Assembly (NCBI RefSeq): GCF_963676685.1
Contig: NC_092355.1
Span: 81,282,001 to 81,346,000 of the forward strand
Reading direction: 5' to 3'
Source of the DNA: Mytilus edulis
Taxonomy: Eukaryota
DNA: 64,000 bases
Position 1 is the stretch's first letter. Every line of letters begins with the position of its first letter. The position numbers and the translations under genes are program-made. Positions 6,154 through 43,984 of the stretch are shown here, piece by piece. The notes below the pieces were generated by a model, which did not search any database, was not told the origin of the DNA, and saw nothing but the letters and a program-made list of their open reading frames with translations.

Positions 6154-9100
6154 ACTGTTCCAGACTTCAGTCTGCAGAGGCTATTCAGCCACCAAAAGCC
6201 CTTTTAAGGGCTACCCAATTTATTCAAAAAGAATCTACAATTGTTGTACATTAGTTATCAAACTAAATCTAGCTGAGCCCTACCCTTTTCTTTACTTTTC
6301 TCTGAACTTTGCACTGGTCTCTGAAATATTTTTTGGGGTCACATTATTTCCATTGTTTGTTTTATTTCACTCCTTATGACTATACTATTTCTAACACCTA
6401 AGTATGCAGCTGGGTTTTTTTTTTTTTTTTGATATATTTTGTGTAGTTAGGCACCATTAAAGTTATATCAGTGTATTTTCACGCACTTATTTGAACTGAA
6501 TATAACTTTTTCTATTCAGTTTTCGTTAGAGTGACAATCTACGAAAATAGGAAGTCATGCTAGGGTTTTATTGTGCTCTTTTTTTTAGGGGGAAGGGGGT
6601 CAAAATCACACAGCTAACCTTCAACCGAAAAATCATTTTTGTCATTATGTGAGTTTTTCCATTTCTCTCTTCTTCTTCGTATTCAACTTGACTGACATTT
6701 TTTGTTGGACTTTTTCTACACGTAAGCAAAGTCAAAGGTTGGCTCTCTATTTCATATCAACTAGTCAATGGGGAGGTAACTCTAAAATTAAACTCAGTAC
6801 TTTTTTTCAGAACTATATAAATAAACTGTTAAAATGTACATAATACAAAAGATGTATAACGTATCGTAAAAATCAGATTAGTAGCAAATGAATGCAGTGA
6901 CGTTTGTCTGTTATTTATTTATTTTTTTATTTATTACTTGTCAAAATTACTACAATAATATTGTGTATTAAAAGTTAAAAGGAAACTCTAAAGTATGGAG
7001 GTTTTTGTTCAACCTTTAACAGTTCTGCAATTATTTTGTCATTTTATTACCTGCGATTTATTATGCAAATTTCACTATTCTCTACCTTTCGAATTTCATC
7101 TTTGTTTTACTCGTGTATAAAATAAATGCACCTACTTGTTTCTATGTTTCTTTCAAATGGTTGTCCTGTGTTTTTTCTCTTCTTTTTTCTCTCTGTTATT
7201 TAGTGCGCGACGACTTGACTGTATCTTTGCTATGTCATTTTAATCTTTCCACAGCACGCGAGGTGAATAAACCCGAAACAATACAGTGACGTCACACGTG
7301 ACTACTGTGATGAACAGAAACAAGGATGGATGGACGGACAGTGGTACAAAAAGTAAGAAAAAGTTATTTCTCTGATAAAAGGTATCGCGTGAATTGTAGG
7401 TTCACGGTATAGGTTTTTTCTCTCATTTTTGAAGATCATATATACAGTTGTCTATAATTGCTTACATCCACTTCCTTTGAACTATGGTGGATAGTTGTCT
7501 CATTGGCAATCATACCACATCTCCTTATTTTCATATTGAAATGACAGCAACTTAACGACACACACAAACATAGCCTGCTAGTATATACGTACATGGGAGA
7601 CTGAAAAATTCTGTGCTTATTGGTAAATGATAAAAAAAAACATTAAAACTTTAAGGTATGCTATGACTAAGCTTTAAATATAAGGTAGATAGGGAGTAGG
7701 AAACACACATATTTTTTTTTTTTATTTGGCCTTAATGAAGAAGAAAAGCACACACACAATATATTAGAACTTGTACTAACATCCATTAAACGCTATGCTA
7801 ATATATGTCTTTAAAAGAGAACCATTATTTTATTTTAATTTATTTTTTCTTCGTTTCAATCTTGGTTTTTGATTCTTTTTACATTAAATCTGTTTTTACT
7901 GTTGCAATAGTTTACAAATATTTTTAGTCCAAATACAATTCATTGATAATATATCCCCCCTTTTTTGTCCGGATTTTTTTTTTTTTTTTTTTTTTGAAAA
8001 AGGGGGGGGGGGCTGGAGGTTTAGTTAAATGCAGTGGAAAAATGTTTTGCCCAAAGTCCAATGGTTCACACTGATGTGTTTTTGTCCTTCTGTCTCTTTT
8101 TAATCGTCCGTGTCACGGGATGCTGCTTCACCCTTTACCGGTTCTGGTTTCACTTGCATAGCTTATATAGGTATAATGCATATGTATAGCCAGAGTCTTC
8201 ACTGTGACACACATTCCCCTTTTTGAGGGGAAATAAATAACTTTTGTAATTGTCAATTAAGATACAAATGATATGTACCACTGTCGAATTATAAAACTAC
8301 AAAAATCTTCGTGTTTTGTTTTTGTTTTGTTGATTTTTTTTGTTTGTATCGAAACTTTCAGGCGGCCAGGCCACTTTGAGCTCAGATCATCGGTTATTGA
8401 TAATAAAATTAATGAAATATATTTTGTTGAAAAATATGGTATATTCGATAAGACATATTCGAGTTTTTGACTTGAAAGTGCGCAAATTGTACATGCAAAT
8501 GGAAATAAAAGCGAAGACGCATCATACAGAACAGTTGTTCAGTGCCTCAGATCCACTGAAAACAAAGTCGCTCTCTGAAAAGTTCCCAACGCTAGATTAA
8601 ATAAAAAGATGTTTCAAATTCGTATTCTAGATATTGGGTTTGTTCATTCGACTCTTGAATGTTTGCGAAATTTCGCTCGGGTTGAATAAAAATGTTATTT
8701 GAAGTTTTAGTAAAAATCTGCAATTAAACAATGGCGCGTGAACTTTTTGTGTGTTTCCCTCTAGCTGGAAACAAACTTATTACGAGGAGGAACATGCTTC
8801 CAGTGAATAAAAACGGAAAGAAACCTAAAGAGAAATGATTTTTCTTCCTCTGTACAATTTTACGACGATAGAATATTTGTGTAATGAGAAAAACTCGTAA
8901 ATTTTCTGTCAACATACCTGCGAAGACAATTCAGTCGGTTCTACTTTAACTATTAATATCTTTTTACTGTGTACATCGAAAAATACACAGTTTATCTAAC
9001 ATGCAAGATTAATGACTGTTGAGCAATTTGGTATGCTATATGTGAATGTTTTTGATAGAATTATACTATAAATTATCATAAAAGTCTTCGAAGAAGCACA

Positions 9101-9270
9101 TAATCATTTTACCGAGATCGCGTAATGGATTTTACAAGTTATTTTTAAGGGTGTCTTCGTCGAGGTCCGCGTTCGTCTGTTATAAATAAACGAGGCCTGG
9201 AATGGCGTTATTTTCAAATCGTTATTCGTAGTATAAACTTCGTAAAGGATAATATTTTGAATCATTCAAA

Positions 9271-9846: not shown

Positions 9847-12800
9847 ACTGTTCCAGACTTCAGTCTGCAGAGGCTATTCAGCCACCAAAAGCCCTTTTAA
9901 GGGCTACCCAATTTATTCAAAAAGAATCTACAATTGTTGTACATTAGTTATCAAACTAAATCTAGCTGAGCCCTACCCTTTTCTTTACTTTTCTCTGAAC
10001 TTTGCACTGGTCTCTGAAATATTTTTTGGGGTCACATTATTTCCATTGTTTGTTTTATTTCACTCCTTATGACTATACTATTTCTAACACCTAAGTATGC
10101 AGCTGGGTTTTTTTTTTTTTTTTGATATATTTTGTGTAGTTAGGCACCATTAAAGTTATATCAGTGTATTTTCACGCACTTATTTGAACTGAATATAACT
10201 TTTTCTATTCAGTTTTCGTTAGAGTGACAATCTACGAAAATAGGAAGTCATGCTAGGGTTTTATTGTGCTCTTTTTTTTAGGGGGAAGGGGGTCAAAATC
10301 ACACAGCTAACCTTCAACCGAAAAATCATTTTTGTCATTATGTGAGTTTTTCCATTTCTCTCTTCTTCTTCGTATTCAACTTGACTGACATTTTTTGTTG
10401 GACTTTTTCTACACGTAAGCAAAGTCAAAGGTTGGCTCTCTATTTCATATCAACTAGTCAATGGGGAGGTAACTCTAAAATTAAACTCAGTACTTTTTTT
10501 CAGAACTATATAAATAAACTGTTAAAATGTACATAATACAAAAGATGTATAACGTATCGTAAAAATCAGATTAGTAGCAAATGAATGCAGTGACGTTTGT
10601 CTGTTATTTATTTATTTTTTTATTTATTACTTGTCAAAATTACTACAATAATATTGTGTATTAAAAGTTAAAAGGAAACTCTAAAGTATGGAGGTTTTTG
10701 TTCAACCTTTAACAGTTCTGCAATTATTTTGTCATTTTATTACCTGCGATTTATTATGCAAATTTCACTATTCTCTACCTTTCGAATTTCATCTTTGTTT
10801 TACTCGTGTATAAAATAAATGCACCTACTTGTTTCTATGTTTCTTTCAAATGGTTGTCCTGTGTTTTTTCTCTTCTTTTTTCTCTCTGTTATTTAGTGCG
10901 CGACGACTTGACTGTATCTTTGCTATGTCATTTTAATCTTTCCACAGCACGCGAGGTGAATAAACCCGAAACAATACAGTGACGTCACACGTGACTACTG
11001 TGATGAACAGAAACAAGGATGGATGGACGGACAGTGGTACAAAAAGTAAGAAAAAGTTATTTCTCTGATAAAAGGTATCGCGTGAATTGTAGGTTCACGG
11101 TATAGGTTTTTTCTCTCATTTTTGAAGATCATATATACAGTTGTCTATAATTGCTTACATCCACTTCCTTTGAACTATGGTGGATAGTTGTCTCATTGGC
11201 AATCATACCACATCTCCTTATTTTCATATTGAAATGACAGCAACTTAACGACACACACAAACATAGCCTGCTAGTATATACGTACATGGGAGACTGAAAA
11301 ATTCTGTGCTTATTGGTAAATGATAAAAAAAAACATTAAAACTTTAAGGTATGCTATGACTAAGCTTTAAATATAAGGTAGATAGGGAGTAGGAAACACA
11401 CATATTTTTTTTTTTTATTTGGCCTTAATGAAGAAGAAAAGCACACACACAATATATTAGAACTTGTACTAACATCCATTAAACGCTATGCTAATATATG
11501 TCTTTAAAAGAGAACCATTATTTTATTTTAATTTATTTTTTCTTCGTTTCAATCTTGGTTTTTGATTCTTTTTACATTAAATCTGTTTTTACTGTTGCAA
11601 TAGTTTACAAATATTTTTAGTCCAAATACAATTCATTGATAATATATCCCCCCTTTTTTGTCCGGATTTTTTTTTTTTTTTTTTTTTTGAAAAAGGGGGG
11701 GGGGGCTGGAGGTTTAGTTAAATGCAGTGGAAAAATGTTTTGCCCAAAGTCCAATGGTTCACACTGATGTGTTTTTGTCCTTCTGTCTCTTTTTAATCGT
11801 CCGTGTCACGGGATGCTGCTTCACCCTTTACCGGTTCTGGTTTCACTTGCATAGCTTATATAGGTATAATGCATATGTATAGCCAGAGTCTTCACTGTGA
11901 CACACATTCCCCTTTTTGAGGGGAAATAAATAACTTTTGTAATTGTCAATTAAGATACAAATGATATGTACCACTGTCGAATTATAAAACTACAAAAATC
12001 TTCGTGTTTTGTTTTTGTTTTGTTGATTTTTTTTGTTTGTATCGAAACTTTCAGGCGGCCAGGCCACTTTGAGCTCAGATCATCGGTTATTGATAATAAA
12101 ATTAATGAAATATATTTTGTTGAAAAATATGGTATATTCGATAAGACATATTCGAGTTTTTGACTTGAAAGTGCGCAAATTGTACATGCAAATGGAAATA
12201 AAAGCGAAGACGCATCATACAGAACAGTTGTTCAGTGCCTCAGATCCACTGAAAACAAAGTCGCTCTCTGAAAAGTTCCCAACGCTAGATTAAATAAAAA
12301 GATGTTTCAAATTCGTATTCTAGATATTGGGTTTGTTCATTCGACTCTTGAATGTTTGCGAAATTTCGCTCGGGTTGAATAAAAATGTTATTTGAAGTTT
12401 TAGTAAAAATCTGCAATTAAACAATGGCGCGTGAACTTTTTGTGTGTTTCCCTCTAGCTGGAAACAAACTTATTACGAGGAGGAACATGCTTCCAGTGAA
12501 TAAAAACGGAAAGAAACCTAAAGAGAAATGATTTTTCTTCCTCTGTACAATTTTACGACGATAGAATATTTGTGTAATGAGAAAAACTCGTAAATTTTCT
12601 GTCAACATACCTGCGAAGACAATTCAGTCGGTTCTACTTTAACTATTAATATCTTTTTACTGTGTACATCGAAAAATACACAGTTTATCTAACATGCAAG
12701 ATTAATGACTGTTGAGCAATTTGGTATGCTATATGTGAATGTTTTTGATAGAATTATACTATAAATTATCATAAAAGTCTTCGAAGAAGCACATAATCAT

Positions 12801-13799
12801 TTTAAATTCTCCCTCGCCCTGCTCGTCCGAATTTAAAGCATTTAATTTCTAATTCAATAGGCTATAAACAAGACAAACACAGATATAGGATTAGTTGCTC
12901 GCAGTAACATCTTATTTTCTCTTGCGATACAATATTTTATTTTACTGAATTGTACATATTTCTTCAATCGAAACATTATATAAACACATGACATATAACA
13001 TTGTTCCTCTTTCGCATCGTTTCTTTTCCCCCGGCTAATGCCTCCAACGCCTGTACGTACAATAAACATAGCAGCAACTGCACATATACCTATGTGACCA
13101 ACTTCAATCCGACGTAACTGCGAGCACCTTCGATACTAATACATTTAAATCCCAAAGTTTATATAGTACCTTTAAACCCCACCCATAAAAACCGCCAAAA
13201 CTTTCCTCGTGCCTCCTGCACCTAACATCAAACTTATAAATAGTACATACTGTTACAAAACCAGTATCCGAACTAGTTATACTAGTTCCCATCTGTAAAT
13301 ATTAACTACAAATAGCAAACGGGAAAAACCCTATTTCAAACGAAATAAAATACATTTAAATTCTCCCTCGCCCTGCTCGTCCGAATTTAAAGCATTTAAT
13401 TTCTAATTCAATAGGCTATAAACAAGACAAACACAGATATAGGATTAGTTGCTCGCAGTAACATCGAAACAAAGGAAATGAAACAGTTCAGAATAAGATG
13501 CTGATATAAAAAGTCTTTGAGATATTGCTAATTGAAGATAAATCTTCAACCACTAAACTGGACCAATATCAGTTTCAAGTCAATAATCGGAACGTCAAAT
13601 ACGACATATTGAACCGGAAGCTTCCGCAATAGATGGTTATACAGACAAATGTTTTGCAAATCTTGAATCGATGGATAATTTCTCAAACTGTTTTCTTTGA
13701 TTCTGTAAATAGAAGAACACAATCAAAACTTCATACATACATGTACTTGTATCTTAATCAGATAAACATTAAACTCTATAGATATATACATATTTCCTA

Positions 13800-14050
13800 T
13801 CTATATACATCAACTTCTAATCATAGTATGTGATTCTTTATGTTACACACTGCAACATAGCTCATGAAAGTCTAAACATATATGCATCTCAGATCTACAT
13901 ACATCAACTTCTAATCACACTGTGATCCTTTATGTCACACTGCGCAACATAGCTCATGAAAATCTAAACATATATGCATCTCAGATCTACATACATCAAC
14001 TTCATATCACACTGTGTGATCCTATTGTTACATTCATAAAAATCTAAACA
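13800..14050 (+). repeat. ~92-bp tandem repeat (about 2.5-3 degenerate copies) inside the insertion
   Basis: acatcaactt...tgtgat...ctcatgaaa.tctaaacatatatgcatctcagatctacat recurs at ~13807, 13901, 13993. Confidence 0.8.
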
Positions 14051-14472
14051 TATATATATATATATATATCTATTATATCAACAACAACAAAAAACAAAGT
14101 CTACAGCTATGTCTGAAGCTCTGACTTTGTACAAGGTTTCTTATTATCTTTGTTACATTTTTATTATCGATTTTAAATTAAAAAGTTTTCCACTCAATAT
14201 GTTATGTACTCATGTGTACGGACTGTAAAATATTACTGCTTACCGTTTTAAAATCTCTCCAAGTTGAACTCTTGGTACTGTCCGATTTATCTCACATAAA
14301 AACGGGCTACTTTTTATACCTACACCTGCATATTTGTGGCATCCGGGAAATAATTAGCACATACATAAGGTCTCCAATATAGTACTAAAACTCTGATCGT
14401 TTTATAGTAAATGCGACCTGCTGATAAAATAAAATCAAAATTGTGGTATTTAATGAAAAAACATATAAAATT

Positions 14473-15746
14473 GATGATTATTACAATCTCATCTTCAAAT
14501 CAATTGTATACATATATTTAATTATGTACAAAAGTTAATGCCTTCATATTTAATCTTTTGTTTTCTGTATATTAATTTAACTATACAACATCCCATGGTG
14601 CATTGTGCAACCAATCACATCGCTCCCAGCGACAACATTCCATGGTGCACTACACTGTGCAACCAATCACGTCGCAACATTCCATGGTGCACTACACTGT
14701 GCAACCAATCACATCGCTCCCAGCGACAACATTCCATGGTGCACTACACTGTGCAACCAATCACATCGCTCCCAGCGACAATATTCCATGGTGCACTACA
14801 CTGTGCAACCAATCACATCGCTCCCAGCGATCTAATAAAATAAATTTCATACATACCATTTCAAACTCATCTGTAACTCGTATCACTCTTCGTGACAAAA
14901 TCATCTCACTGCGAGAAGATTTAAACATATGTTGTTTCCATGTCTCAAATCTAGTACAAGTCTTACAAATTCTTTACCTGAACTTTGTACTGAAACAGTA
15001 ATCAGATTTTATACAAAAGGTGGACACTGTAATATTTAGTGAGCATTTCATCTATCAACTTTTAAATAAAAGTTGCATGCTTAAAAGCTGATTTGTTTTT
15101 CATATTAATGAACTCAACATGGTTCACATGATGATTATTACAAGTCTCATCTTAAAATCAATTGTATACATATATTTAATAATGTACAAAAAGTTAATGC
15201 CTTCATATTTAATCTTTTGTTTTCTGTATATTAATTAAACTATACAACATCCCATGGTGCATTGTACAACCAATCACATCGCTCCCAGCGACAACATTCC
15301 ATGGTGCACTACACTGTGCAACCAATCACATCGCTCCCAGCGACAACATTCCATGGTGCACTACACTGTGCAACCAATCACATCGCTCCCAGCGACAATA
15401 TTCCATGGTGCACTACACTGTGCAACCAATCACATCGCTCCCAGCGATCTAATAAAATAAATTTCATACATACCATTTCAAACTCATCTGTAACTCGTAT
15501 CACTCTCCGTGACAAAATCATCTCACTGCGAGAAGATTTAAACATATGTTGTTTCCATGTCTCAAATCTAGTACAAGTCTTACAAATTCTTTACCTGAAC
15601 TTTGTACTGAAACAGTAATCAGATTTATACAAAAGGTGGACACTGCAATATTTAGTGAGCATTTCATCTATCAACTTTTAAATAAAAGTTGCATGCTTAA
15701 AAGCTGATTTGTTTTTCATATTAATGAACTCAACATGGTTCACATG
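14473..15746 (+). repeat. ~620-660-bp tandem duplication inside the insertion, each half with a 52-bp minisatellite (5 and 4 copies)
   Basis: Blocks start gatgattattacaa at ~14473 and ~15130. The unit ccatggtgcactacactgtgcaaccaatcacatcgctcccagcgacaacatt is at 14593-14830 and 15252-15447. Confidence 0.92.
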
Positions 15747-16457
15747 GTTCAGTATTGAATGGAAATATATAACCAAATTCTATAGTATTTTAAAATAAAA
15801 TCATAAACCTGTAAAACGGTTTTTTAAAAAACAAGAACACAAATATATTGATTTTCGCTTCTAACTTAATAATTCGTTCCAGGCATGATTTCAGAATGTA
15901 AATAAAGTCAACATTATACTCAACTCCGTCATGTGAAAACATGTTCCTCTTTCGCATCGTTTCTTTTCCCCCGGCTAATGCCTCCAACGCCTGTACGTAC
16001 AATAAACATAGCAGCAACTGCACATATACCTATGTGACCAACTTCAATCCGACGTAACTGCGAGCACCTTCGATACTAATACATTTAAATCCCAAAGTTT
16101 ATATAGTACCTTTAAACCCCACCCATAAAAACCGCCAAAACTTTCCTCGTGCCTCCTGCACCTAACATCAAACTTATAAATAGTACATACTGTTACAAAA
16201 CCAGTATCCGAACTAGTTATACTAGTTCCCATCTGTAAATATTAACTACAAATAGCAAACGGGAAAAACCCTATTTCAAACGAAATAAAATACATTTACC
16301 GAGATCGCGTAATGGATTTTACAAGTTATTTTTAAGGGTGTCTTCGTCGAGGTCCGCGTTCGTCTGTTATAAATAAACGAGGCCTGGAATGGCGTTATTT
16401 TCAAATCGTTATTCGTAGTATAAACTTCGTAAAGGATAATATTTTGAATCATTCAAA

Positions 16458-17033
16458 ATGGCAGACGCAACAGCAGCACCAGCAGTAGCACCAGCTAAAT
16501 CACCAAAGAAAAAGGCAGCAGCCAAGCCAAAGAAGCCTTCCGCACATCCTAAATACAGCGAGATGATTGGAAAAGCCATCGCCGCTTTGAAAGAACGTGG
16601 AGGTTCTTCAAGGCAAGCAATTCTGAAGTACATCATGGCCAACTTCAACGTCGGAAAAGATGCCAAGTCAGTAAATGCTCATTTAAAACTTGCACTCAGA
16701 GCCGGAGTTAAGAACAACAGTTTGAAGCAGTCCAAGGGAACTGGAGCATCCGGATCTTTCAGAATTGGAGAGGCTAAAGTAGTTAAAAAGAAGCCAGCAA
16801 AGGCAAAGAAAGCAGCCAAACCTAAGGCCGCCAAGCCGAAGAAGGCAAAGAGCACACCCAAGAAGAAGAAGCCAGCAGCAAAGAAACCAGCTGGAGAAAA
16901 AAAGGCTGCCAAACCAAAGGCAAAAAAACCAGCAGCAAAGAAAGCAGCCAAGCCAAAGAAGCCAGCAGCCAAGTCACCAGCAAAAAAGAAGGCAGCCAAA
17001 CCAAAAGCCAAGAAGACACCAAAGAAGAAGTAA
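16458..17033 (+). CDS. H1: Histone H1, copy 4 (promoter interrupted by a 3.5-kb insertion)
   Basis: Identical 191-aa ORF; only 159 bp of native upstream sequence remain contiguous. Confidence 0.98.
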   Translation: MADATAAPAVAPAKSPKKKAAAKPKKPSAHPKYSEMIGKAIAALKERGGSSRQAILKYIMANFNVGKDAKSVNAHLKLALRAGVKNNSLKQSKGTGASGSFRIGEAKVVKKKPAKAKKAAKPKAAKPKKAKSTPKKKKPAAKKPAGEKKAAKPKAKKPAAKKAAKPKKPAAKSPAKKKAAKPKAKKTPKKK

Positions 17034-20000
17034 ACTGTTCCAGACTTCAGTCTGCAGAGGCTATTCAGCCACCAAAAGCCCTTTTAAGGGCTACCCAATT
17101 TATTCAAAAAGAATCTACAATTGTTGTACATTAGTTATCAAACTAAATCTAGCTGAGCCCTACCCTTTTCTTTACTTTTCTCTGAACTTTGCACTGGTCT
17201 CTGAAATATTTTTTGGGGTCACATTATTTCCATTGTTTGTTTTATTTCACTCCTTATGACTATACTATTTCTAACACCTAAGTATGCAGCTGGGTTTTTT
17301 TTTTTTTTTTGATATATTTTGTGTAGTTAGGCACCATTAAAGTTATATCAGTGTATTTTCACGCACTTATTTGAACTGAATATAACTTTTTCTATTCAGT
17401 TTTCGTTAGAGTGACAATCTACGAAAATAGGAAGTCATGCTAGGGTTTTATTGTGCTCTTTTTTTTAGGGGGAAGGGGGTCAAAATCACACAGCTAACCT
17501 TCAACCGAAAAATCATTTTTGTCATTATGTGAGTTTTTCCATTTCTCTCTTCTTCTTCGTATTCAACTTGACTGACATTTTTTGTTGGACTTTTTCTACA
17601 CGTAAGCAAAGTCAAAGGTTGGCTCTCTATTTCATATCAACTAGTCAATGGGGAGGTAACTCTAAAATTAAACTCAGTACTTTTTTTCAGAACTATATAA
17701 ATAAACTGTTAAAATGTACATAATACAAAAGATGTATAACGTATCGTAAAAATCAGATTAGTAGCAAATGAATGCAGTGACGTTTGTCTGTTATTTATTT
17801 ATTTTTTTATTTATTACTTGTCAAAATTACTACAATAATATTGTGTATTAAAAGTTAAAAGGAAACTCTAAAGTATGGAGGTTTTTGTTCAACCTTTAAC
17901 AGTTCTGCAATTATTTTGTCATTTTATTACCTGCGATTTATTATGCAAATTTCACTATTCTCTACCTTTCGAATTTCATCTTTGTTTTACTCGTGTATAA
18001 AATAAATGCACCTACTTGTTTCTATGTTTCTTTCAAATGGTTGTCCTGTGTTTTTTCTCTTCTTTTTTCTCTCTGTTATTTAGTGCGCGACGACTTGACT
18101 GTATCTTTGCTATGTCATTTTAATCTTTCCACAGCACGCGAGGTGAATAAACCCGAAACAATACAGTGACGTCACACGTGACTACTGTGATGAACAGAAA
18201 CAAGGATGGATGGACGGACAGTGGTACAAAAAGTAAGAAAAAGTTATTTCTCTGATAAAAGGTATCGCGTGAATTGTAGGTTCACGGTATAGGTTTTTTC
18301 TCTCATTTTTGAAGATCATATATACAGTTGTCTATAATTGCTTACATCCACTTCCTTTGAACTATGGTGGATAGTTGTCTCATTGGCAATCATACCACAT
18401 CTCCTTATTTTCATATTGAAATGACAGCAACTTAACGACACACACAAACATAGCCTGCTAGTATATACGTACATGGGAGACTGAAAAATTCTGTGCTTAT
18501 TGGTAAATGATAAAAAAAAACATTAAAACTTTAAGGTATGCTATGACTAAGCTTTAAATATAAGGTAGATAGGGAGTAGGAAACACACATATTTTTTTTT
18601 TTTATTTGGCCTTAATGAAGAAGAAAAGCACACACACAATATATTAGAACTTGTACTAACATCCATTAAACGCTATGCTAATATATGTCTTTAAAAGAGA
18701 ACCATTATTTTATTTTAATTTATTTTTTCTTCGTTTCAATCTTGGTTTTTGATTCTTTTTACATTAAATCTGTTTTTACTGTTGCAATAGTTTACAAATA
18801 TTTTTAGTCCAAATACAATTCATTGATAATATATCCCCCCTTTTTTGTCCGGATTTTTTTTTTTTTTTTTTTTTTGAAAAAGGGGGGGGGGGCTGGAGGT
18901 TTAGTTAAATGCAGTGGAAAAATGTTTTGCCCAAAGTCCAATGGTTCACACTGATGTGTTTTTGTCCTTCTGTCTCTTTTTAATCGTCCGTGTCACGGGA
19001 TGCTGCTTCACCCTTTACCGGTTCTGGTTTCACTTGCATAGCTTATATAGGTATAATGCATATGTATAGCCAGAGTCTTCACTGTGACACACATTCCCCT
19101 TTTTGAGGGGAAATAAATAACTTTTGTAATTGTCAATTAAGATACAAATGATATGTACCACTGTCGAATTATAAAACTACAAAAATCTTCGTGTTTTGTT
19201 TTTGTTTTGTTGATTTTTTTTGTTTGTATCGAAACTTTCAGGCGGCCAGGCCACTTTGAGCTCAGATCATCGGTTATTGATAATAAAATTAATGAAATAT
19301 ATTTTGTTGAAAAATATGGTATATTCGATAAGACATATTCGAGTTTTTGACTTGAAAGTGCGCAAATTGTACATGCAAATGGAAATAAAAGCGAAGACGC
19401 ATCATACAGAACAGTTGTTCAGTGCCTCAGATCCACTGAAAACAAAGTCGCTCTCTGAAAAGTTCCCAACGCTAGATTAAATAAAAAGATGTTTCAAATT
19501 CGTATTCTAGATATTGGGTTTGTTCATTCGACTCTTGAATGTTTGCGAAATTTCGCTCGGGTTGAATAAAAATGTTATTTGAAGTTTTAGTAAAAATCTG
19601 CAATTAAACAATGGCGCGTGAACTTTTTGTGTGTTTCCCTCTAGCTGGAAACAAACTTATTACGAGGAGGAACATGCTTCCAGTGAATAAAAACGGAAAG
19701 AAACCTAAAGAGAAATGATTTTTCTTCCTCTGTACAATTTTACGACGATAGAATATTTGTGTAATGAGAAAAACTCGTAAATTTTCTGTCAACATACCTG
19801 CGAAGACAATTCAGTCGGTTCTACTTTAACTATTAATATCTTTTTACTGTGTACATCGAAAAATACACAGTTTATCTAACATGCAAGATTAATGACTGTT
19901 GAGCAATTTGGTATGCTATATGTGAATGTTTTTGATAGAATTATACTATAAATTATCATAAAAGTCTTCGAAGAAGCACATAATCATTTTACCGAGATCG

Positions 20001-24419: not shown

Positions 24420-26431
24420 ACTGTTCCAGACTTCAGTCTGCAGAGGCTATTCAGCCACCAAAAGCCCTTTTAAGGGCTACCCAATTTATTCAAAAAGAAT
24501 CTACAATTGTTGTACATTAGTTATCAAACTAAATCTAGCTGAGCCCTACCCTTTTCTTTACTTTTCTCTGAACTTTGCACTGGTCTCTGAAATATTTTTT
24601 GGGGTCACATTATTTCCATTGTTTGTTTTATTTCACTCCTTATGACTATACTATTTCTAACACCTAAGTATGCAGCTGGGTTTTTTTTTTTTTTTTGATA
24701 TATTTTGTGTAGTTAGGCACCATTAAAGTTATATCAGTGTATTTTCACGCACTTATTTGAACTGAATATAACTTTTTCTATTCAGTTTTCGTTAGAGTGA
24801 CAATCTACGAAAATAGGAAGTCATGCTAGGGTTTTATTGTGCTCTTTTTTTTAGGGGGAAGGGGGTCAAAATCACACAGCTAACCTTCAACCGAAAAATC
24901 ATTTTTGTCATTATGTGAGTTTTTCCATTTCTCTCTTCTTCTTCGTATTCAACTTGACTGACATTTTTTGTTGGACTTTTTCTACACGTAAGCAAAGTCA
25001 AAGGTTGGCTCTCTATTTCATATCAACTAGTCAATGGGGAGGTAACTCTAAAATTAAACTCAGTACTTTTTTTCAGAACTATATAAATAAACTGTTAAAA
25101 TGTACATAATACAAAAGATGTATAACGTATCGTAAAAATCAGATTAGTAGCAAATGAATGCAGTGACGTTTGTCTGTTATTTATTTATTTTTTTATTTAT
25201 TACTTGTCAAAATTACTACAATAATATTGTGTATTAAAAGTTAAAAGGAAACTCTAAAGTATGGAGGTTTTTGTTCAACCTTTAACAGTTCTGCAATTAT
25301 TTTGTCATTTTATTACCTGCGATTTATTATGCAAATTTCACTATTCTCTACCTTTCGAATTTCATCTTTGTTTTACTCGTGTATAAAATAAATGCACCTA
25401 CTTGTTTCTATGTTTCTTTCAAATGGTTGTCCTGTGTTTTTTCTCTTCTTTTTTCTCTCTGTTATTTAGTGCGCGACGACTTGACTGTATCTTTGCTATG
25501 TCATTTTAATCTTTCCACAGCACGCGAGGTGAATAAACCCGAAACAATACAGTGACGTCACACGTGACTACTGTGATGAACAGAAACAAGGATGGATGGA
25601 CGGACAGTGGTACAAAAAGTAAGAAAAAGTTATTTCTCTGATAAAAGGTATCGCGTGAATTGTAGGTTCACGGTATAGGTTTTTTTCTCTCATTTTTGAA
25701 GATCATATATACAGTTGTCTATAATTGCTTACATCCACTTCCTTTGAACTATGGTGGATAGTTGTCTCATTGGCAATCATACCACATCTCCTTATTTTCA
25801 TATTGAAATGACAGCAACTTAACGACACACACAAACATAGCCTGCTAGTATATACGTACATGGGAGACTGAAAAATTCTGTGCTTATTGGTAAATGATAA
25901 AAAAAAACATTAAAACTTTAAGGTATGCTATGACTAAGCTTTAAATATAAGGTAGATAGGGAGTAGGAAACACACATATTTTTTTTTTTTATTTGGCCTT
26001 AATGAAGAAGAAAAGCACACACACAATATATTAGAACTTGTACTAACATCCATTAAACGCTATGCTAATATATGTCTTTAAAGAGAACCATTATTTTATT
26101 TTAATTTATTTTTTCTTCGTTTCAATCTTGGTTTTTGATTCTTTTTACATTAAATCTGTTTTTACTGTTGCAATAGTTTACAAATATTTTTAGTCCAAAT
26201 ACAATTCATTGATAATATATCCCCCCTTTTTTGTCCGGATTTTTTTTTTTTTTTTTTTTTTGAAAAAGGGGGGGGGGGGCTGGAGGTTTAGTTAAATGCA
26301 GTGGAAAAATGTTTTGCCCAAAGTCCAATGGTTCACACTGATGTGTTTTTGTCCTTCTGTCTCTTTTTAATCGTCCGTGTCACGGGATGCTGCTTCACCC
26401 TTTACCGGTTCTGGTTTCACTTGCATAGCTT

Positions 26432-26531
26432 NNNNNNNNNNNNNNNNNNNNNNNNNNNNNNNNNNNNNNNNNNNNNNNNNNNNNNNNNNNNNNNNNNNNN
26501 NNNNNNNNNNNNNNNNNNNNNNNNNNNNNNN
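26432..26531. other. Assembly gap (100 N) inside the array
   Basis: Run of 100 N; the flanks are out of phase with the 3693-bp period (ATG-to-ATG 4948). Confidence 0.99.
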
Positions 26532-28791
26532 AACCTTTAACAGTTCTGCAATTATTTTGTCATTTTATTACCTGCGATTTATTATGCAAATTTCACTATT
26601 CTCTACCTTTCGAATTTCATCTTTGTTTTACTCGTGTATAAAATAAATGCACCTACTTGTTTCTATGTTTCTTTCAAATGGTTGTCCTGTGTTTTTTCTC
26701 TTCTTTTTTCTCTCTGTTATTTAGTGCGCGACGACTTGACTGTATCTTTGCTATGTCATTTTAATCTTTCCACAGCACGCGAGGTGAATAAACCCGAAAC
26801 AATACAGTGACGTCACACGTGACTACTGTGATGAACAGAAACAAGGATGGATGGACGGACAGTGGTACAAAAAGTAAGAAAAAGTTATTTCTCTGATAAA
26901 AGGTATCGCGTGAATTGTAGGTTCACGGTATAGGTTTTTTCTCTCATTTTTGAAGATCATATATACAGTTGTCTATAATTGCTTACATCCACTTCCTTTG
27001 AACTATGGTGGATAGTTGTCTCATTGGCAATCATACCACATCTCCTTATTTTCATATTGAAATGACAGCAACTTAACGACACACACAAACATAGCCTGCT
27101 AGTATATACGTACATGGGAGACTGAAAAATTCTGTGCTTATTGGTAAATGATAAAAAAAAACATTAAAACTTTAAGGTATGCTATGACTAAGCTTTAAAT
27201 ATAAGGTAGATAGGGAGTAGGAAACACACATATTTTTTTTTTTTATTTGGCCTTAATGAAGAAGAAAAGCACACACACAATATATTAGAACTTGTACTAA
27301 CATCCATTAAACGCTATGCTAATATATGTCTTTAAAAGAGAACCATTATTTTATTTTAATTTATTTTTTCTTCGTTTCAATCTTGGTTTTTGATTCTTTT
27401 TACATTAAATCTGTTTTTACTGTTGCAATAGTTTACAAATATTTTTAGTCCAAATACAATTCATTGATAATATATCCCCCCTTTTTTGTCCGGATTTTTT
27501 TTTTTTTTTTTTTTTTGAAAAAGGGGGGGGGGGCTGGAGGTTTAGTTAAATGCAGTGGAAAAATGTTTTGCCCAAAGTCCAATGGTTCACACTGATGTGT
27601 TTTTGTCCTTCTGTCTCTTTTTAATCGTCCGTGTCACGGGATGCTGCTTCACCCTTTACCGGTTCTGGTTTCACTTGCATAGCTTATATAGGTATAATGC
27701 ATATGTATAGCCAGAGTCTTCACTGTGACACACATTCCCCTTTTTGAGGGGAAATAAATAACTTTTGTAATTGTCAATTAAGATACAAATGATATGTACC
27801 ACTGTCGAATTATAAAACTACAAAAATCTTCGTGTTTTGTTTTTGTTTTGTTGATTTTTTTTGTTTGTATCGAAACTTTCAGGCGGCCAGGCCACTTTGA
27901 GCTCAGATCATCGGTTATTGATAATAAAATTAATGAAATATATTTTGTTGAAAAATATGGTATATTCGATAAGACATATTCGAGTTTTTGACTTGAAAGT
28001 GCGCAAATTGTACATGCAAATGGAAATAAAAGCGAAGACGCATCATACAGAACAGTTGTTCAGTGCCTCAGATCCACTGAAAACAAAGTCGCTCTCTGAA
28101 AAGTTCCCAACGCTAGATTAAATAAAAAGATGTTTCAAATTCGTATTCTAGATATTGGGTTTGTTCATTCGACTCTTGAATGTTTGCGAAATTTCGCTCG
28201 GGTTGAATAAAAATGTTATTTGAAGTTTTAGTAAAAATCTGCAATTAAACAATGGCGCGTGAACTTTTTGTGTGTTTCCCTCTAGCTGGAAACAAACTTA
28301 TTACGAGGAGGAACATGCTTCCAGTGAATAAAAACGGAAAGAAACCTAAAGAGAAATGATTTTTCTTCCTCTGTACAATTTTACGACGATAGAATATTTG
28401 TGTAATGAGAAAAACTCGTAAATTTTCTGTCAACATACCTGCGAAGACAATTCAGTCGGTTCTACTTTAACTATTAATATCTTTTTACTGTGTACATCGA
28501 AAAATACACAGTTTATCTAACATGCAAGATTAATGACTGTTGAGCAATTTGGTATGCTATATGTGAATGTTTTTGATAGAATTATACTATAAATTATCAT
28601 AAAAGTCTTCGAAGAAGCACATAATCATTTTACCGAGATCGCGTAATGGATTTTACAAGTTATTTTTAAGGGTGTCTTCGTCGAGGTCCGCGTTCGTCTG
28701 TTATAAATAAACGAGGCCTGGAATGGCGTTATTTTCAAATCGTTATTCGTAGTATAAACTTCGTAAAGGATAATATTTTGAATCATTCAAA

Positions 28792-39700: not shown

Positions 39701-39871
39701 ATAATCATTTTACCGAGATCGCGTAATGGATTTTACAAGTTATTTTTAAGGGTGTCTTCGTCGAGGTCCGCGTTCGTCTGTTATAAATAAACGAGGCCTG
39801 GAATGGCGTTATTTTCAAATCGTTATTCGTAGTATAAACTTCGTAAAGGATAATATTTTGAATCATTCAAA

Positions 39872-40447
39872 ATGGCAGACGCAACAGCAGCACCAGCAGT
39901 AGCACCAGCTAAATCACCAAAGAAAAAGGCAGCAGCCAAGCCAAAGAAGCCTTCCGCACATCCTAAATACAGCGAGATGATTGGAAAAGCCATCGCCGCT
40001 TTGAAAGAACGTGGAGGTTCTTCAAGGCAAGCAATTCTGAAGTACATCATGGCCAACTTCAACGTCGGAAAAGATGCCAAGTCAGTAAATGCTCATTTAA
40101 AACTTGCACTCAGAGCCGGAGTTAAGAACAACAGTTTGAAGCAGTCCAAGGGAACTGGAGCATCCGGATCTTTCAGAATTGGAGAGGCTAAAGTAGTTAA
40201 AAAGAAGCCAGCAAAGGCAAAGAAAGCAGCCAAACCTAAGGCCGCCAAGCCGAAGAAGGCAAAGAGCACACCCAAGAAGAAGAAGCCAGCAGCAAAGAAA
40301 CCAGCTGGAGAAAAAAAGGCTGCCAAACCAAAGGCAAAAAAACCAGCAGCAAAGAAAGCAGCCAAGCCAAAGAAGCCAGCAGCCAAGTCACCAGCAAAAA
40401 AGAAGGCAGCCAAACCAAAAGCCAAGAAGACACCAAAGAAGAAGTAA
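39872..40447 (+). CDS. H1: Histone H1, copy 10
   Basis: Identical 191-aa ORF. Confidence 0.99.
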   Translation: MADATAAPAVAPAKSPKKKAAAKPKKPSAHPKYSEMIGKAIAALKERGGSSRQAILKYIMANFNVGKDAKSVNAHLKLALRAGVKNNSLKQSKGTGASGSFRIGEAKVVKKKPAKAKKAAKPKAAKPKKAKSTPKKKKPAAKKPAGEKKAAKPKAKKPAAKKAAKPKKPAAKSPAKKKAAKPKAKKTPKKK

Positions 40448-43408
40448 ACTGTTCCAGACTTCAGTCTGCAGAGGCTATTCAGCCACCAAAAGCCCTTTTA
40501 AGGGCTACCCAATTTATTCAAAAAGAATCTACAATTGTTGTACATTAGTTATCAAACTAAATCTAGCTGAGCCCTACCCTTTTCTTTACTTTTCTCTGAA
40601 CTTTGCACTGGTCTGTGAAATATTTTTTGGGGTCATTGTTTGTTTTATTTCACTCCTTATGACTATACTATTTCTAACACCTAAGTATGCAGCTGTTTTT
40701 TGGATATTTTTTGTGTAGTTAGGCACCATTAAAGTTATATCAGTGTATTTTCACGCACTTATTTGAACTGAACAGAACTTTTTCTATTCAGTTTTCGTTA
40801 GAGTGACAATCTACGAAAATAGGAAGTCATGCTAGGGTTTTATTGTGCTCTTTTTTTTAGGGGGAAGGGGGTCAAAATCACACAGCTAACCTTCAACCGA
40901 AAAATCATTTTTGCCATTATGTGAGTTTTTCCATTCCTCTCTTCTTCTTCGTGTTCAACTTGACTGACATTTTTTGTTGGACTTTTTCTACACGTAAGCA
41001 AAGTCAAAGGTTGGCTCTCTATTTCATATCAACTAGTCAATGGGGAGGTAACTCTAAAATTAAACTCAGTACTTTTTTTCAGTACTATATAAATAAACTG
41101 TTAAAATGTACACAATACAAAAGATGTATAACGTATCGTAAAAATCAGATTAGTAGCAAATGAATGCAGTGACGTTTGTCTGTTATTTGTTTATTTGTTT
41201 ATTTATTATTTGTCAAAATTACTACAATAATATTGTGTATTAAAAGTTAGAAGGAAACTCTAAAGTACGGAGGTTTTTGTTCAACATTTAACAGTTCTGC
41301 AATTATTTTGTCATTTTATTACCTGCGATTTATTAGGCAAATTTCACTATTCTCTACCTTTCGAATTTCACCTTTGTTTTACTCGTGTATAAAATAAATG
41401 CACCTACTTGTTTCTATGTTTCTTTCAAATGGTTGTCCTGTGTTTTTTCTCTTCTTTTTTCTCTCTGTTATTTAGTGTGTGACGACTTGACTGTATCTTT
41501 GCTATGTCGTTTTAAGCTGTCCACAGCGCGCGAGGTGAATAAACCCGAAACAATACAGTGACGTCACATGTGACTACTGTGATGAACAAAAACAAGGATG
41601 GATGGACGGACAGTGGTACAAAAAGTAAGAAAAAGTATATATTTCTCTGATAACAGGTATCGCGTGAATTGTAGGTTCACGGTATAGGTTTTTTCTCTCT
41701 CATTTTTAAAGATCATATATACAGTTGTCTATAATTGCTTACATCCACTTCATTTGAACTATGGTGGATATTTGTCTCATTGGCAATCATACCACATCTC
41801 CTTATTTTCATATTGAAATGACAGCAACTTAACGACACACACAAACATAGCCTACTAGTATATACGTACATGGGAGACTGAGAAAATCTGTGCTTATTGG
41901 AAAATGATAAAAAAGAAAAAGAATCTTTAAGGTATGCTATGACTAAGCTTAAAATAAAGGTAGATAGGGAGTAGGAAACACACATATTCTTTTTTATTTG
42001 GCCTTAATGAAGAAGAAAACCACACACACAGCATATTAGATCTTGTACTAACAGCCATTAAACGCTATGCTAATATGTCTTCAAAAGAGAACCCTATTAT
42101 ATATCCCCCCTTTTTTCTCCGGATTTTGTTTTTTTTTGGAAAAAAGGGGGAGGGGCTGGCGGTTTAGTTAAATACAGTGGAAAAAAGTTTTGCCCAAAGT
42201 CCAATGGTTCACACTGATGTGTTTTTTGTCCTTCTGTCTCTTTTTAATCGTCCGTGTCACGGGATGCTGCTTCACCCTTTACCGGTTCTGGGTTCACTTG
42301 CACATATATATATAGCTTATATAGGTATAATGCATATGTATAGCCAGAGGTCTTCACTGTGACACACATTCCCCTCTTTGAGGGGAAATAAATGAACTTT
42401 TGTAATTGTCAATTAAGATACAAATGATATGTACCACTTTCGAATTATAAAACTACAAAAATCTTCGTGTTTTGTTTTTGTTTGTATCGAAACTTTCAGG
42501 CGGCCAAGCCACTTTGAGCTCAGATCATCGGTTCTTGATAATACAATTAATTAAATATATTTTGTTGGAAAATATGGTATATTCTATAAGACATATTCGA
42601 GTTTTTGACTTGAAAGTGCGCAAATTGTACATGCAAATGGAAATAAACGCGAAGACGCATCATACAGAACAGTTGTTCAGTGCCTGAGATCCACTGAAAA
42701 CAAAGTCGCTCTCTGAAAAGTTCCCAACGCTAAATTAAATAAAAAGATGTTTCAAATTCGTATTCTAGATATTGGGTTTGTTCATTCGAATATTTAATGT
42801 TTGCGAAATTTCGCTCGGGTTGAATAAAAATGTTATTTGAAGTTTTAGTAAAAATCTGCAATTAAACAATGGCGCGTGAACATTTTGTGTGTTTCCCTCT
42901 AGCTGGAAACAAACTTATTACGAGGAGGAACATGCTTCCAGTGAATAAAAACGGAAAGAAACCTAAAGAGAAATGATTTTTCTTCCGCTGTACAATTTTA
43001 CGACGATAGAATATTTGTGTAATGAGAAAAACTCGTAAATTTTCTGTCAACATACCTGCGAAGACAATTCAGTCGGTTCTACTTTAACTATTAATATCTT
43101 TTTACTGTGTACATCGAAAAATACACAGTTTATCTAACATGCAAGATTAATGACTGTTGAGCAATTTGGTATGCTATATGTGAATGTTTTTGATAGAATT
43201 ATACTATAAATTATCATAAAAGTCTTCGAAGAAGCACATAATCATTTTACCGAGATCGCGTAATGGATTTTACAAGTTATTTTTAAGGGTGTCTTCGTCG
43301 AGGTCCGCGTTCGTCTGTTATAAATAAACGAGGCCTGGAATGGCGTTATTTTCAAATCGTTATTCGTAGTATAAACTTCGTAAAGGATAATATTTTGAAT
43401 CATTCAAA

Positions 43409-43984
43409 ATGGCAGACGCAACAGCAGCACCAGCAGTAGCACCAGCTAAATCACCAAAGAAAAAGGCAGCAGCCAAGCCAAAGAAGCCTTCCGCACATCC
43501 TAAATACAGCGAGATGATTGGAAAAGCCATCGCCGCTTTGAAAGAACGTGGAGGTTCCTCAAGGCAAGCAATTCTGAAGTACATCATGGCCAACTTCAAC
43601 GTCGGAAAAGATGCCAAGTCAGTAAATGCTCATTTAAAACTTGCACTCAGAGCCGGAGTTAAGAACAACAGTTTGAAGCAGTCCAAGGGAACTGGAGCAT
43701 CCGGATCTTTCAGAATTGGAGAGGCCAAAGTAGTTAAAAAGAAGCCAGCAAAGGCAAAGAAGGCAGCCAAACCTAAGGCCGCCAAGCCTAAGAAGGCAAA
43801 GAGTACACCCAAGAAGAAGAAGCCAGCAGCAAAGAAACCAGCTGGAGAGAAAAAGGCGGCCAAACCAAAAGCAAAAAAACCAGCAGCAAAGAAAGCAGCC
43901 AAGCCAAAGAAGCCAGCAGCCAAGTCACCAGCCAAAAAGAAGGCAGCCAAACCAAAAGCCAAGAAGACACCAAAGAAGAAGTAA
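43409..43984 (+). CDS. H1: Histone H1, copy 11 (edge copy, synonymous divergence only)
   Basis: Same protein; about 9 synonymous substitutions counted by eye relative to the central copies. Confidence 0.99.
   Translation: MADATAAPAVAPAKSPKKKAAAKPKKPSAHPKYSEMIGKAIAALKERGGSSRQAILKYIMANFNVGKDAKSVNAHLKLALRAGVKNNSLKQSKGTGASGSFRIGEAKVVKKKPAKAKKAAKPKAAKPKKAKSTPKKKKPAAKKPAGEKKAAKPKAKKPAAKKAAKPKKPAAKSPAKKKAAKPKAKKTPKKK

What the first reader, a model, noticed from the sequence alone, without database searches (positions are those of the whole stretch)
12805..16298. Young, ORF-less split-direct-repeat (tyrosine-recombinase-type) retroelement inserted in a histone H1 promoter
Seen: one array unit carries an exact 3494-bp insertion, and the other units give the empty site. 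Read on the minus strand the layout is A1 (16298-15942) - internal 2.5 kb - B1 (13465-13359) A2 (13358-13002) - 90-bp spacer - B2 (12911-12805). A1=A2 (357 bp) and B1=B2 (107 bp) are identical. Established: A1...B1A2..B2 is the split-direct-repeat layout of PAT/Ngaro/VIPER/TOC1-type tyrosine-recombinase retrotransposons, in which the B1A2 junction templates the circle junction. Inference: with no gag/RT/YR coding, this is a non-autonomous passenger family mobilised in trans. I do not recognise it as a described bivalve family. Perfect terminal repeats alongside older, diverged internal duplications argue for a very recent reverse-transcription cycle.
Basis: partly seen in the sequence, partly recalled or inferred. 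Interest (0 to 1): 0.92.

Follow-up and report, generated by a model that had tools for sequence, protein, structure and literature searches.

The report
Young defective retroelement in H1 array
One repeat of a mussel histone H1 gene array carries a very recent 3.5-kb insertion of a defective, non-coding jumping gene of the tyrosine-recombinase (DIRS/PAT-like) retrotransposon kind. This is a clean, young example of a known type, not a new kind of element.

Summary
Window 12805-16298 is a 3494-bp insertion in one 3693-bp unit of an H1-only histone array, and the other units show the empty site. On the minus strand it reads A1 - internal - B1A2 - 90-bp spacer - B2, with A1=A2 (357 bp) and B1=B2 (107 bp) identical.

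The genome (Mytilus edulis by protein identity) holds about 30 copies with this layout and about 215 solo A-spacer-B units. No copy has a target-site duplication. Targets share 0-10 bp with the B|A junction.

Variants private to one copy sit in both A1 and A2, so the repeats are rebuilt from one template each cycle.

The element is non-coding but keeps decayed remnants of a pol N-terminus. Older family members keep a pseudogene of the Dam-like methyltransferase domain typical of DIRS/PAT elements. Its B repeat and junction are homologous to those that follow the recombinase gene of RNaseH-MT-YR elements in this genome. One family with open pol and recombinase reading frames has a junction 88-89% identical, shown by coordinates only.

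Verdict: a young, non-autonomous PAT-like (DIRS-order) retroelement, a new member of a known kind. The scan's first readers have noted similar split-repeat elements elsewhere in this genome. Reads and further genome letters could not be obtained.

The parts
12805..16298 (-). Whole inserted element (3494 bp). Element coordinates q1-3494 run from 16298 down to 12805.
   Evidence: The flanks are collinear with the empty units. Full-length copies with the same ends sit at unrelated loci.
15942..16298 (-). A1, the 5' split direct repeat (357 bp). It starts (TAA)ATGTATTTTATTTCG and has a TATATAAA box at 16098-16105.
   Evidence: Identical to A2. The TATA box is read from the sequence; its promoter role is inferred.
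13466..15941 (-). Internal region (2476 bp), non-coding, with decayed pol remnants and tandem repeats.
   Evidence: No ORF longer than 132 aa. tblastn remnants.
15739..15894 (-). pol N-terminal remnant (q405-560), aligned to aa 124-158 of the public RT-RNH-MT polyprotein P0045.
   Evidence: 33% identity over 52 aa, E 2e-4. Collinear with the next remnant.
15551..15628 (-). pol remnant at the start of the RT domain (q671-748; NLITVSVQSSGKE..RLVLDL).
   Evidence: 54-62% identity to L050 ORF, P0026, P0045, P0060 and P0114. Pfam RVT_1 begins just after the aligned residues in P0045. There is also an 80% nucleotide match to L050.
14934..15035 (-). Second copy of the same pol remnant (q1264-1365), inside the 616-bp internal duplication.
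14472..15746 (-). Two roughly 616-bp internal duplicates, each with 52-bp tandem repeats (14530-14821 and 15189-15438). All young-subfamily copies examined share them, so they are older than this insertion.
14139..14291 (-). Weak RNase H-like remnant (q2008-2160; SSTWRDFK ... DNKN). It is out of order relative to pol and is not relied on.
   Evidence: 13 bits, against a best of 7.4 bits in 600 shuffled frames. Full-length pols did not find it.
13779..14023 (-). 92-bp tandem repeats.
   Evidence: D8, D9.
13359..13465 (-). B1 (107 bp). Its 3' half is homologous to the B repeats of autonomous YR elements.
13339..13378 (-). B1|A2 junction ...GAGAATTTAA|ATGTATTTTATTTC, an imperfect AT-rich palindrome (GAATTTAAAT-GT-ATTTTATTTC, 8 of 10). 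It is the copy of the joined ends.
   Evidence: The motif is conserved as ..AGAAnnTAA|ATnTATTT.. in six autonomous families.
13002..13358 (-). A2 (357 bp).
12912..13001 (-). 90-bp spacer found only between A2 and B2. A-spacer-B is also the solo unit.
   Evidence: 252 candidate places in the genome, of which the 40 scored are at least 99% identical.
12805..12911 (-). B2 (107 bp), the 3' end ...GGGAGAATTTAA.
12801..12804 (.). Target bases TTTA (TAAA on the element strand), shared with the end of A. This is the crossover microhomology, not a duplication.
   Evidence: the empty site reads AATCATTTTA|CCGAGATCG.
16458..17117 (+). Histone H1 gene (191 aa) and its 3' stem-loop (17072-17117), just downstream of the insertion.
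   Evidence: Pfam PF00538. Rfam RF00032.

Best explanation
The insertion is a non-autonomous, internally deleted and decayed member of the PAT-like branch of the DIRS order, the tyrosine-recombinase retrotransposons with split direct repeats.

Likely cycle (inferred from the published DIRS/SDR model):
1. A sub-genomic RNA starts inside A1 and ends inside B2.
2. It is reverse-transcribed by RT supplied by an autonomous relative.
3. The internal B1A2 segment is the template that restores the missing outer ends and joins them.
4. The helper's tyrosine recombinase crosses the B|A junction (..GAATTTAA|ATGTATTT..) with a similar AT-rich genomic site. No bases are duplicated or lost.

Here the crossover used TAAA, 160 bp upstream of one H1 gene of the array. 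The identical repeat pairs show this happened very recently. The roughly 215 solo A-spacer-B units are what remains after A1 x A2 recombination or an equivalent recombinase-made deletion.

Shown: anatomy, family, absence of TSD, junction microhomology, repeat homogenisation, pol/MT remnants, and homology of B and the junction to YR-encoding elements.

Inferred: the RNA ends, the joined-end intermediate, supply of enzymes in trans, and which family is the helper.
For: 1. The layout A-int-B-A-sp-B is found in all 19 loci that hold both A repeats, counting the histone locus three times (L001-L003); the order is never permuted.

2. There are about 29 A1-to-internal boundaries, 38 B|A junction matches and 252 candidate A-sp-B units in the genome.

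3. There is no TSD. Copies with zero homology define the ends as ATGTA...TTTAA. Target-to-junction microhomology averages 3.8 bp against 0.97 at random sites (2 of 20000 resamples reach it). This matches the junction-trinucleotide rule reported for DIRS elements (PMC7192593).

4. In 14 independent copies, variants private to one copy occur in both A1 and A2 (L001 col 202, L005 col 161, L008 col 22, L010 col 66, L011 col 31 and col 322, L020 col 235). The same holds for B1 and B2 (L020 col 94, L006 col 35).

5. Coding remnants: the pol N-terminus and RT start at q405-748, 54-62% identical to RT-RNH-MT polyproteins. Older family copies L017 and L027 keep a Dam-like MT pseudogene (E 1e-16 to 2e-23).

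6. YR loci in the same genome are RNaseH + Dam-MT + YR followed by B1-A2-B2, with B1-to-B2 spacing of 360-642 bp, mostly 524-642 (ours is 554). Our B aligns to theirs (z = 10.4 for L035; conserved blocks).

7. The junction 110-mer is 88-89% identical at four places that lie 84-86 bp downstream of open 339-340-aa YR reading frames 99-100% identical to XP_071151635.1. Two of these four (C4, C7) also showed a 790-aa open RNH-MT frame.

8. The literature describes A1-[ORFs]-B1A2B2, lack of TSDs, solo AB repeats, and SIRE = A2+B2 of VIPER with a private ~30-bp spacer (PMC8547959, PMC8969392, PMC6681497).
Against: - This copy has no intact RT or YR, and no helper has been verified at sequence level. 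The candidate is known only by coordinates, and its MT region is only 71% identical at nucleotide level to the family's MT pseudogene. A different relative (C9:79.27 Mb) is 90% identical there but has a stop in its YR.
- No RNA, cDNA or circle data exist; the reads tools could not be used.
- If the intermediate were a circle with two equal B|A junctions, permuted insertions (A-sp-B-A-int-B) would be expected, and none was seen in 14 or more copies.
- One B1-only variant shared by L008 and L015 (col 90) shows that B1 and B2 are not always homogenised.
- The RNase H-like remnant is weak and out of order.
Confidence: 0.85

Rival explanations
1. DNA-only movement. The element is now a Crypton-like passenger. 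A tyrosine recombinase excises it as a double-stranded circle by crossing its two ends and re-inserts it, with no reverse transcription. The split repeats would be a relic of its retroelement ancestor.
For: There is no TSD, and junction-target microhomology is present. The genome is rich in YR genes. No RT is encoded.
Against: - Private variants shared by A1 and A2, and by B1 and B2, in many copies need both repeats to be regenerated from one template at each move. Cut-and-paste does not do that.
- About 30 full and 215 solo copies at 94-100% identity indicate copy-and-paste growth.
- The B1A2 segment is kept in every copy, as expected if it is needed.
Confidence: 0.07
2. Rolling-circle (Helitron/Helentron-like) composite. 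A long and a short element sharing ends lie head to tail because the first terminator was read through, and the pair moves as one unit.
For: A head-to-tail arrangement of two units with the same ends, no TSD, and AT-rich targets.
Against: - There are no 5'-TC or CTRR-3' ends and no GC-rich 3' hairpin.
- Insertion points are not fixed at A|T or T|T; they vary with homology to the junction.
- A1/A2 are homogenised within copies.
- The internal remnants are RT/MT of DIRS-type pol, not Rep/helicase.
- B and the junction are homologous to the sequence that follows YR genes.
Confidence: 0.02
3. A non-autonomous LTR retrotransposon (LARD/TRIM-like) integrated by a DDE integrase, with A as the LTR (it begins TG and ends CA).
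For: A starts TGTA and ends AACA. A purine-rich tract precedes A2. A1 and A2 behave like LTRs.
Against: - None of the 14 copies has a 4-6-bp TSD.
- Every copy ends with spacer+B2 beyond A2, and that B2 repeats B1.
- No tRNA-type primer-binding site follows A1.
- Relatives encode YR and MT, not an integrase.
Confidence: 0.02
4. Assembly artefact. A repeat copy was wrongly placed into the histone array.
For: The array is highly repetitive and has a gap at 26432-26531. Reads could not be inspected.
Against: - Both junctions are clean to the base against the empty site, with the family's usual microhomology.
- The same junctions were assembled on three contigs.
- The copy has its own private variant in both A repeats.
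Confidence: 0.03

Closest known systems
PAT-like elements of the DIRS order (Pat1, TOC1, Kangaroo type): tyrosine-recombinase retrotransposons with split direct repeats and a methyltransferase-like domain
   Same: - A1-internal-B1A2-B2 layout, no TSD, and integration at sites resembling the junction.
- Relatives in the same genome encode RNaseH, Dam-like MT and YR, followed by B1-A2-B2.
- Family members keep an MT pseudogene.
- PAT/Pat1-like elements are already reported from molluscs (PMC4157794).
   Different: This family has no intact gene, carries satellite-like tandem repeats and a 616-bp internal duplication, and has a 90-bp private spacer between A2 and B2.
SIRE / VIPER of Trypanosoma cruzi
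   Same: SIRE is a short non-coding unit equal to A2 plus B2 of VIPER, with a private ~30-bp piece between them (PMC6681497). The 554-bp A-spacer-B units here are its structural counterpart, and they raise the same question of whether such units are remnants or mobile.
   Different: A different host kingdom and a different YR clade. VIPER lacks the MT domain. Here a 3.5-kb non-autonomous form with all four repeats also exists.
Ngaro elements
   Same: The same split-direct-repeat layout, with solo AB repeats scattered in the genome (PMC8547959).
   Different: Ngaro lacks the MT-like domain (PMC9210276, PMC4157794). The relatives and pseudogene remnants of this family have it.
DIRS-1 of Dictyostelium
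   Same: An internal copy of the joined ends is needed to rebuild the element from a short transcript, and this has been shown experimentally. A junction trinucleotide is proposed to define the target (PMC7192593).
   Different: DIRS-1 has inverted terminal repeats and an internal complementary region, not split direct repeats.

Membership tests
DIRS order, split-direct-repeat type (PAT-like) | Terminal layout A1-internal-B1-A2-B2 with A1=A2 and B1=B2 | tested here: met
   All copies keep this order. There is an extra 90-bp spacer between A2 and B2.
DIRS order, split-direct-repeat type (PAT-like) | No target-site duplication; the target resembles the joined-end sequence | tested here: met
   no TSD in 14 copies, and microhomology of 3.8 bp against 0.97 expected.
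DIRS order, split-direct-repeat type (PAT-like) | Encodes gag, RT/RNase H, MT-like domain and tyrosine recombinase | tested here: not met
   No intact ORF, only decayed pol N-terminus remnants. It therefore qualifies only as a non-autonomous derivative.
DIRS order, split-direct-repeat type (PAT-like) | Sequence homology to coding members (descent from one) | tested here: met
   MT pseudogene in the older copies L017 and L027 (E down to 2e-23). B repeat and junction are homologous to those after YR genes. The junction is 88-89% identical next to open YR reading frames, two of which also have an open pol frame nearby.
DIRS order, split-direct-repeat type (PAT-like) | Repeat pairs regenerated from one template at each cycle | tested here: met
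   copy-private variants are present in both members of a pair. One B1-only shared variant is an exception.
DIRS order, split-direct-repeat type (PAT-like) | Sub-genomic transcript and single-stranded or circular cDNA intermediate | not testable with these tools
DIRS order, split-direct-repeat type (PAT-like) | Autonomous partner with the same A and B ends | tested here: inconclusive
   There is only coordinate-level co-location of the junction match, YR and pol. The DNA could not be fetched.
Ngaro | Absence of the MT-like domain | tested here: not met
   A Dam-like domain is present in relatives (PF05869) and as a pseudogene in family members.
Helitron/Helentron | 5'-TC...CTRR-3' or asymmetric inverted ends, a 3' hairpin, a fixed AT or TT target, and Rep/helicase relatives | tested here: not met
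LTR retrotransposon derivative (LARD/TRIM) | Identical LTRs at the two extremes, flanked by a 4-6-bp TSD | tested here: not met
Retrozyme / Penelope-like pseudo-LTR element | Hammerhead ribozyme in the repeats | tested here: not met
   Rfam scan at E up to 1 found nothing.

The most novel reading that the evidence does not exclude
The roughly 215 solo A-spacer-B units may be primary insertions, not leftovers of deleted full copies. On this reading, the joined-end intermediate carries two B|A sites in direct orientation. The helper's recombinase resolves it into a 2.9-kb and a 0.55-kb circle, and the small circle integrates on its own.

This would make a SIRE-like short interspersed element produced by a recombinase instead of by truncation. 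It would also explain why solos outnumber full copies about 7:1 while being just as young (99-100% identical).
Probability: 0.2. Interest if true: 0.5.

Novelty: new member of a known kind. Interest (0 to 1): 0.33.

Why it matters
- It shows that tyrosine-recombinase retrotransposition has been active very recently in Mytilus edulis, and that defective passengers ride on it.
- It gives natural evidence for the split-repeat replication model, because private variants are copied into both members of a repeat pair.
- It gives a readable integration rule: no duplication, and a crossover at sites resembling ..TTTAA|ATGTA...
- It puts a 3.5-kb insertion about 70 bp upstream of the TATA box of one H1 gene in a tandem array. 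That insertion is a handy marker for how insertions spread or are purged by unequal exchange in gene arrays.
- For annotation, the family and its 554-bp solos should be masked as DIRS/PAT-like, not left as unknown repeats.

Tried and rejected
- **Longer family copies as autonomous partners.** L031 and L032 only carry nested LINE insertions (endonuclease + RT ORFs). L033's extra 2.7 kb has no long ORF.
- **Hammerhead or other Rfam motifs** in the insertion: none at E up to 1.
- **Plain nucleotide similarity to 30 YR loci:** nothing except 55 bp to L050. Homology of B appeared only with local alignment against shuffles.
- **RNase H-like remnant at q2008-2160:** 13 bits, out of order with the other remnants, and not found by full-length pols. 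It is kept only as a weak note.
- **Pfam on the L050 N-terminal ORF:** no RT call. This was settled instead through its full-length homologues.
- **L035,** the locus with the most similar B among the first 30, is a single-copy family, so it is not a likely helper.
- **RNH-MT protein search** did not list the 7-kb relative at C6:33.23 Mb, so its coding state is unknown.
- **Junction palindrome** (8 of 10): AT-rich sequence makes such palindromes by chance, so it gets low weight.
- **Findings search** by sequence was blank.
Full report
**1. The observation**

A self-comparison of the window shows a tandem array with a 3693-bp unit. Each unit holds one 191-aa linker histone gene (Pfam PF00538, E 1e-28) and a histone 3' stem-loop. 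There are eleven stem-loops in the window, and no other ORF of 100 aa or more apart from an antisense one inside H1. H1-only tandem repeats are known in Mytilus edulis (Drabent et al. 1999, as cited in PMC4106214).

One unit is 3494 bp longer. Its left flank 10000-12804 is 100% identical to 6307-9111, and the right flank resumes exactly where the other units continue.
- Empty site: AATCATTTTA|CCGAGATCG.
- Filled site: AATCATTTTA|AATTCTCC...ACATTTA|CCGAGATCG.

Only TTTA is shared between the target and the element end, so there is a 4-bp ambiguity and no duplication.

The insertion point is 160 bp upstream of the H1 ATG and about 70 bp upstream of TATAAATA. The element is antisense to H1.

**2. 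It is a real, multi-copy family**

The genome search found full-length copies with the same first and last bases on six other chromosomes (C3, C5, C7, C8, C11, C13) and on unplaced contigs, at 94-98% identity. It also found many 554-bp copies consisting of A-spacer-B only.

All 19 loci that hold both A repeats have the order A-int-B-A-sp-B. That count includes the histone locus three times, as L001-L003.

Boundary-specific queries give:
- about 29 A1-to-internal boundaries, 22 of them at 95% or more;
- 38 B|A junction matches;
- 252 candidate A-spacer-B places, of which the 40 scored are all at least 99% identical.

That is roughly 30 full elements and 215 solos.

The same histone insertion is also on contigs C1321 and C861. 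They differ from the window copy only by single-base indels, so they are haplotigs or further array units.

**3. Ends and integration**

Copies whose flanks share nothing with the element (L005, L006) define the ends as ATGTATTTT...GAGAATTTAA. The internal B1|A2 joint is these two ends abutted with nothing between them.

No copy has a TSD. Instead the flanks tend to continue the junction sequence. Summed left and right matches are 4, 10, 0, 0, 4, 2, 4, 6, 2, 9, 1, 3, 6 and 2 bp in 14 independent copies. The mean is 3.8 against 0.97 at random positions of the same flanks, and 2 of 20000 resamples reach it.

This is what a crossover between a joined-end (B|A) site and a similar target gives. It matches the junction-trinucleotide rule proposed for DIRS elements (PMC7192593).

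The junction is a short imperfect AT-rich palindrome. I give that little weight.

**4. The repeat pairs are rebuilt at each move**

I aligned A1 and A2 of 14 independent copies. Variants found in only one element are, again and again, present in both of its A repeats: L001 col 202, L005 col 161, L008 col 22, L010 col 66, L011 cols 31 and 322, and L020 col 235. L009 and L032 share col 132 in all four repeats. B behaves likewise (L020 col 94, L006 col 35).

Six of the 14 copies have identical A1 and A2. This LTR-like behaviour argues for replication through a template-copying step. It argues against cut-and-paste or rolling-circle propagation of a fixed composite.

One exception is noted: L008 and L015 share a variant in B1 only.

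**5. What it descends from**

A Pfam YR search of the genome gave 894 candidates, and all 96 scored passed the cut-off. About half of the 30 loci fetched show direct repeats of roughly 100-190 bp just after the YR ORF. Their spacing is 360-642 bp, mostly 524-642, against 554 in ours, i.e. B1-A2-B2.

Their upstream ORFs are RNase H plus a Dam-like methyltransferase domain. With split direct repeats, that is the PAT-like arrangement (PMC4157794, PMC7192593).

Our B aligns significantly with their B: z = 10.4 for L035, and 6-7 for L039 and L050. A multiple alignment shows shared blocks, AAATnnTTTAnnTTCG ... GAG..CGAA ... AGAAnnTAA|ATnTATTT, running across the junction.

Inside our element, q405-560 and q671-748 (duplicated at q1264-1365) translate, with stops, to the N-terminal part of pol up to the first RT motif. 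They are 54-62% identical to the L050 ORF and to public polyproteins. Pfam reads those polyproteins as RVT_1 + RNase H + Dam, with RVT_1 starting just after the aligned residues.

Older family members (79-84% at the A1 boundary) keep more. L017 and L027 carry a frameshifted MT-domain pseudogene (E 1e-16 to 2e-23). In L017 the pol N-terminus is fused to it, which is a plain internal deletion of RT-RNase H.

An RNase H-like stretch at q2008-2160 is weak and out of order. I do not rely on it.

**6. Candidate helper**

The 110-bp junction query also hit four places at 88-89% identity: C7:40506591-40506701, C4:55886095-55886205, C1186:16592-16702 and C11:73180598-73180707.

Each lies 84-86 bp downstream of an open 339-340-aa YR frame. 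Those frames are 99-100% identical to XP_071151635.1 of Mytilus edulis. At two of the four (C4, C7), an RNH-MT match inside a 790-aa open frame lies just upstream.

So a young family with open pol and YR reading frames, and a very similar B|A junction, exists. I could not fetch its DNA, so whether all of A and B match is open.

Its MT region is only 71% identical at nucleotide level to the family's MT pseudogene. A relative at C9:79.27 Mb is 90% identical there but has a stop in its YR. The helper assignment is therefore an inference.

**7. Species**

The L035 YR is 100% identical to a Mytilus edulis RefSeq protein. Contig lengths recorded for M. edulis proteins equal those of G000: 126,317,657. 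P0275 maps at 100% to C1186. G000 is therefore an M. edulis assembly.

**8. Comparison with what is known**

The A1-[ORFs]-B1A2B2 layout, the lack of TSDs and solo AB repeats are textbook DIRS/Ngaro/PAT features (PMC8547959, PMC8969392). PAT-like elements are reported from molluscs (PMC4157794). A short non-coding unit equal to A2+B2 with a private spacer is known as SIRE of VIPER (PMC6681497).

This family is thus a new member of a known kind. First readers of this scan have noted several other split-repeat elements elsewhere in this genome. I did not test whether any of them is this family.

**9. What was not possible**

No reads were available, so there is no direct check of the assembly, of polymorphism, of transcripts or of circles.

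I built no consensus and no repaired frame. Broken frames were read only as they are, with X or * at stops.

**Verdict**

The insertion is a young, non-autonomous, PAT-like DIRS-order retroelement. Interest is moderate to low, because it is a clean instance of known biology.

Noticed in passing
window 26432-26531: There is a 100-N assembly gap inside the H1 array. The unit sequence overlaps by about 1.15 kb on the two sides (24573-26431 against 26532-28632), so an unknown number of units is missing there. I did not fill or look up the Ns.
   Followed up: no
window 39703-45915: The last array units are only 94-96% identical to the others, and the last spacing is 3537 bp instead of 3693. This is a degenerating array edge, and beyond about 45.9 kb the array ends.
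   Followed up: no
L031:3035-9575 and L032:2594-4782: Two different LINE elements inserted into two different family copies at almost the same spot (q2239-2244), in the element's orientation. One is full-length with ORF1, endonuclease and RT; the other is a 5'-truncated RT. This may be a LINE target hotspot.
   Followed up: partly
L026:1-423 and L027:367-1000 (G000 C8:2.08 Mb, C6:33.24 Mb): In the older subfamily, the internal 52-bp repeat is a 47-bp unit expanded into long satellite-like arrays.
   Followed up: no
G000 C6:33232556-33239239: A roughly 7-kb relative of the family has about 0.85 kb extra between A1 and the pol N-terminus. It also has about 2.46 kb extra exactly at the RT-RNase H deletion point of L017. 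It may be a less deleted or coding form. I could not fetch it.
   Followed up: partly
L008 and L015, B1 column 90: Two copies share a variant in B1 that is absent from their B2. Part of B can therefore be inherited separately, which may mark where the transcript ends.
   Followed up: no
G000 genome-wide: There are 900-1600 candidate loci for DIRS-type YR and RNH-MT. Dozens have open frames of 650-900 aa, and several near-identical multi-copy families exist. L051 is a DIRS1-like form with 314-bp inverted repeats and a fused RNH-MT-YR frame.
   Followed up: partly
window 12785-12795 (GAAGAAGCACA): A motif resembling the vertebrate H1-box (AAACACA) ends about 9 bp upstream of the insertion point, so the insertion separates it from the TATA box. 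The motif is recognised from memory and its function here is untested.
   Followed up: no
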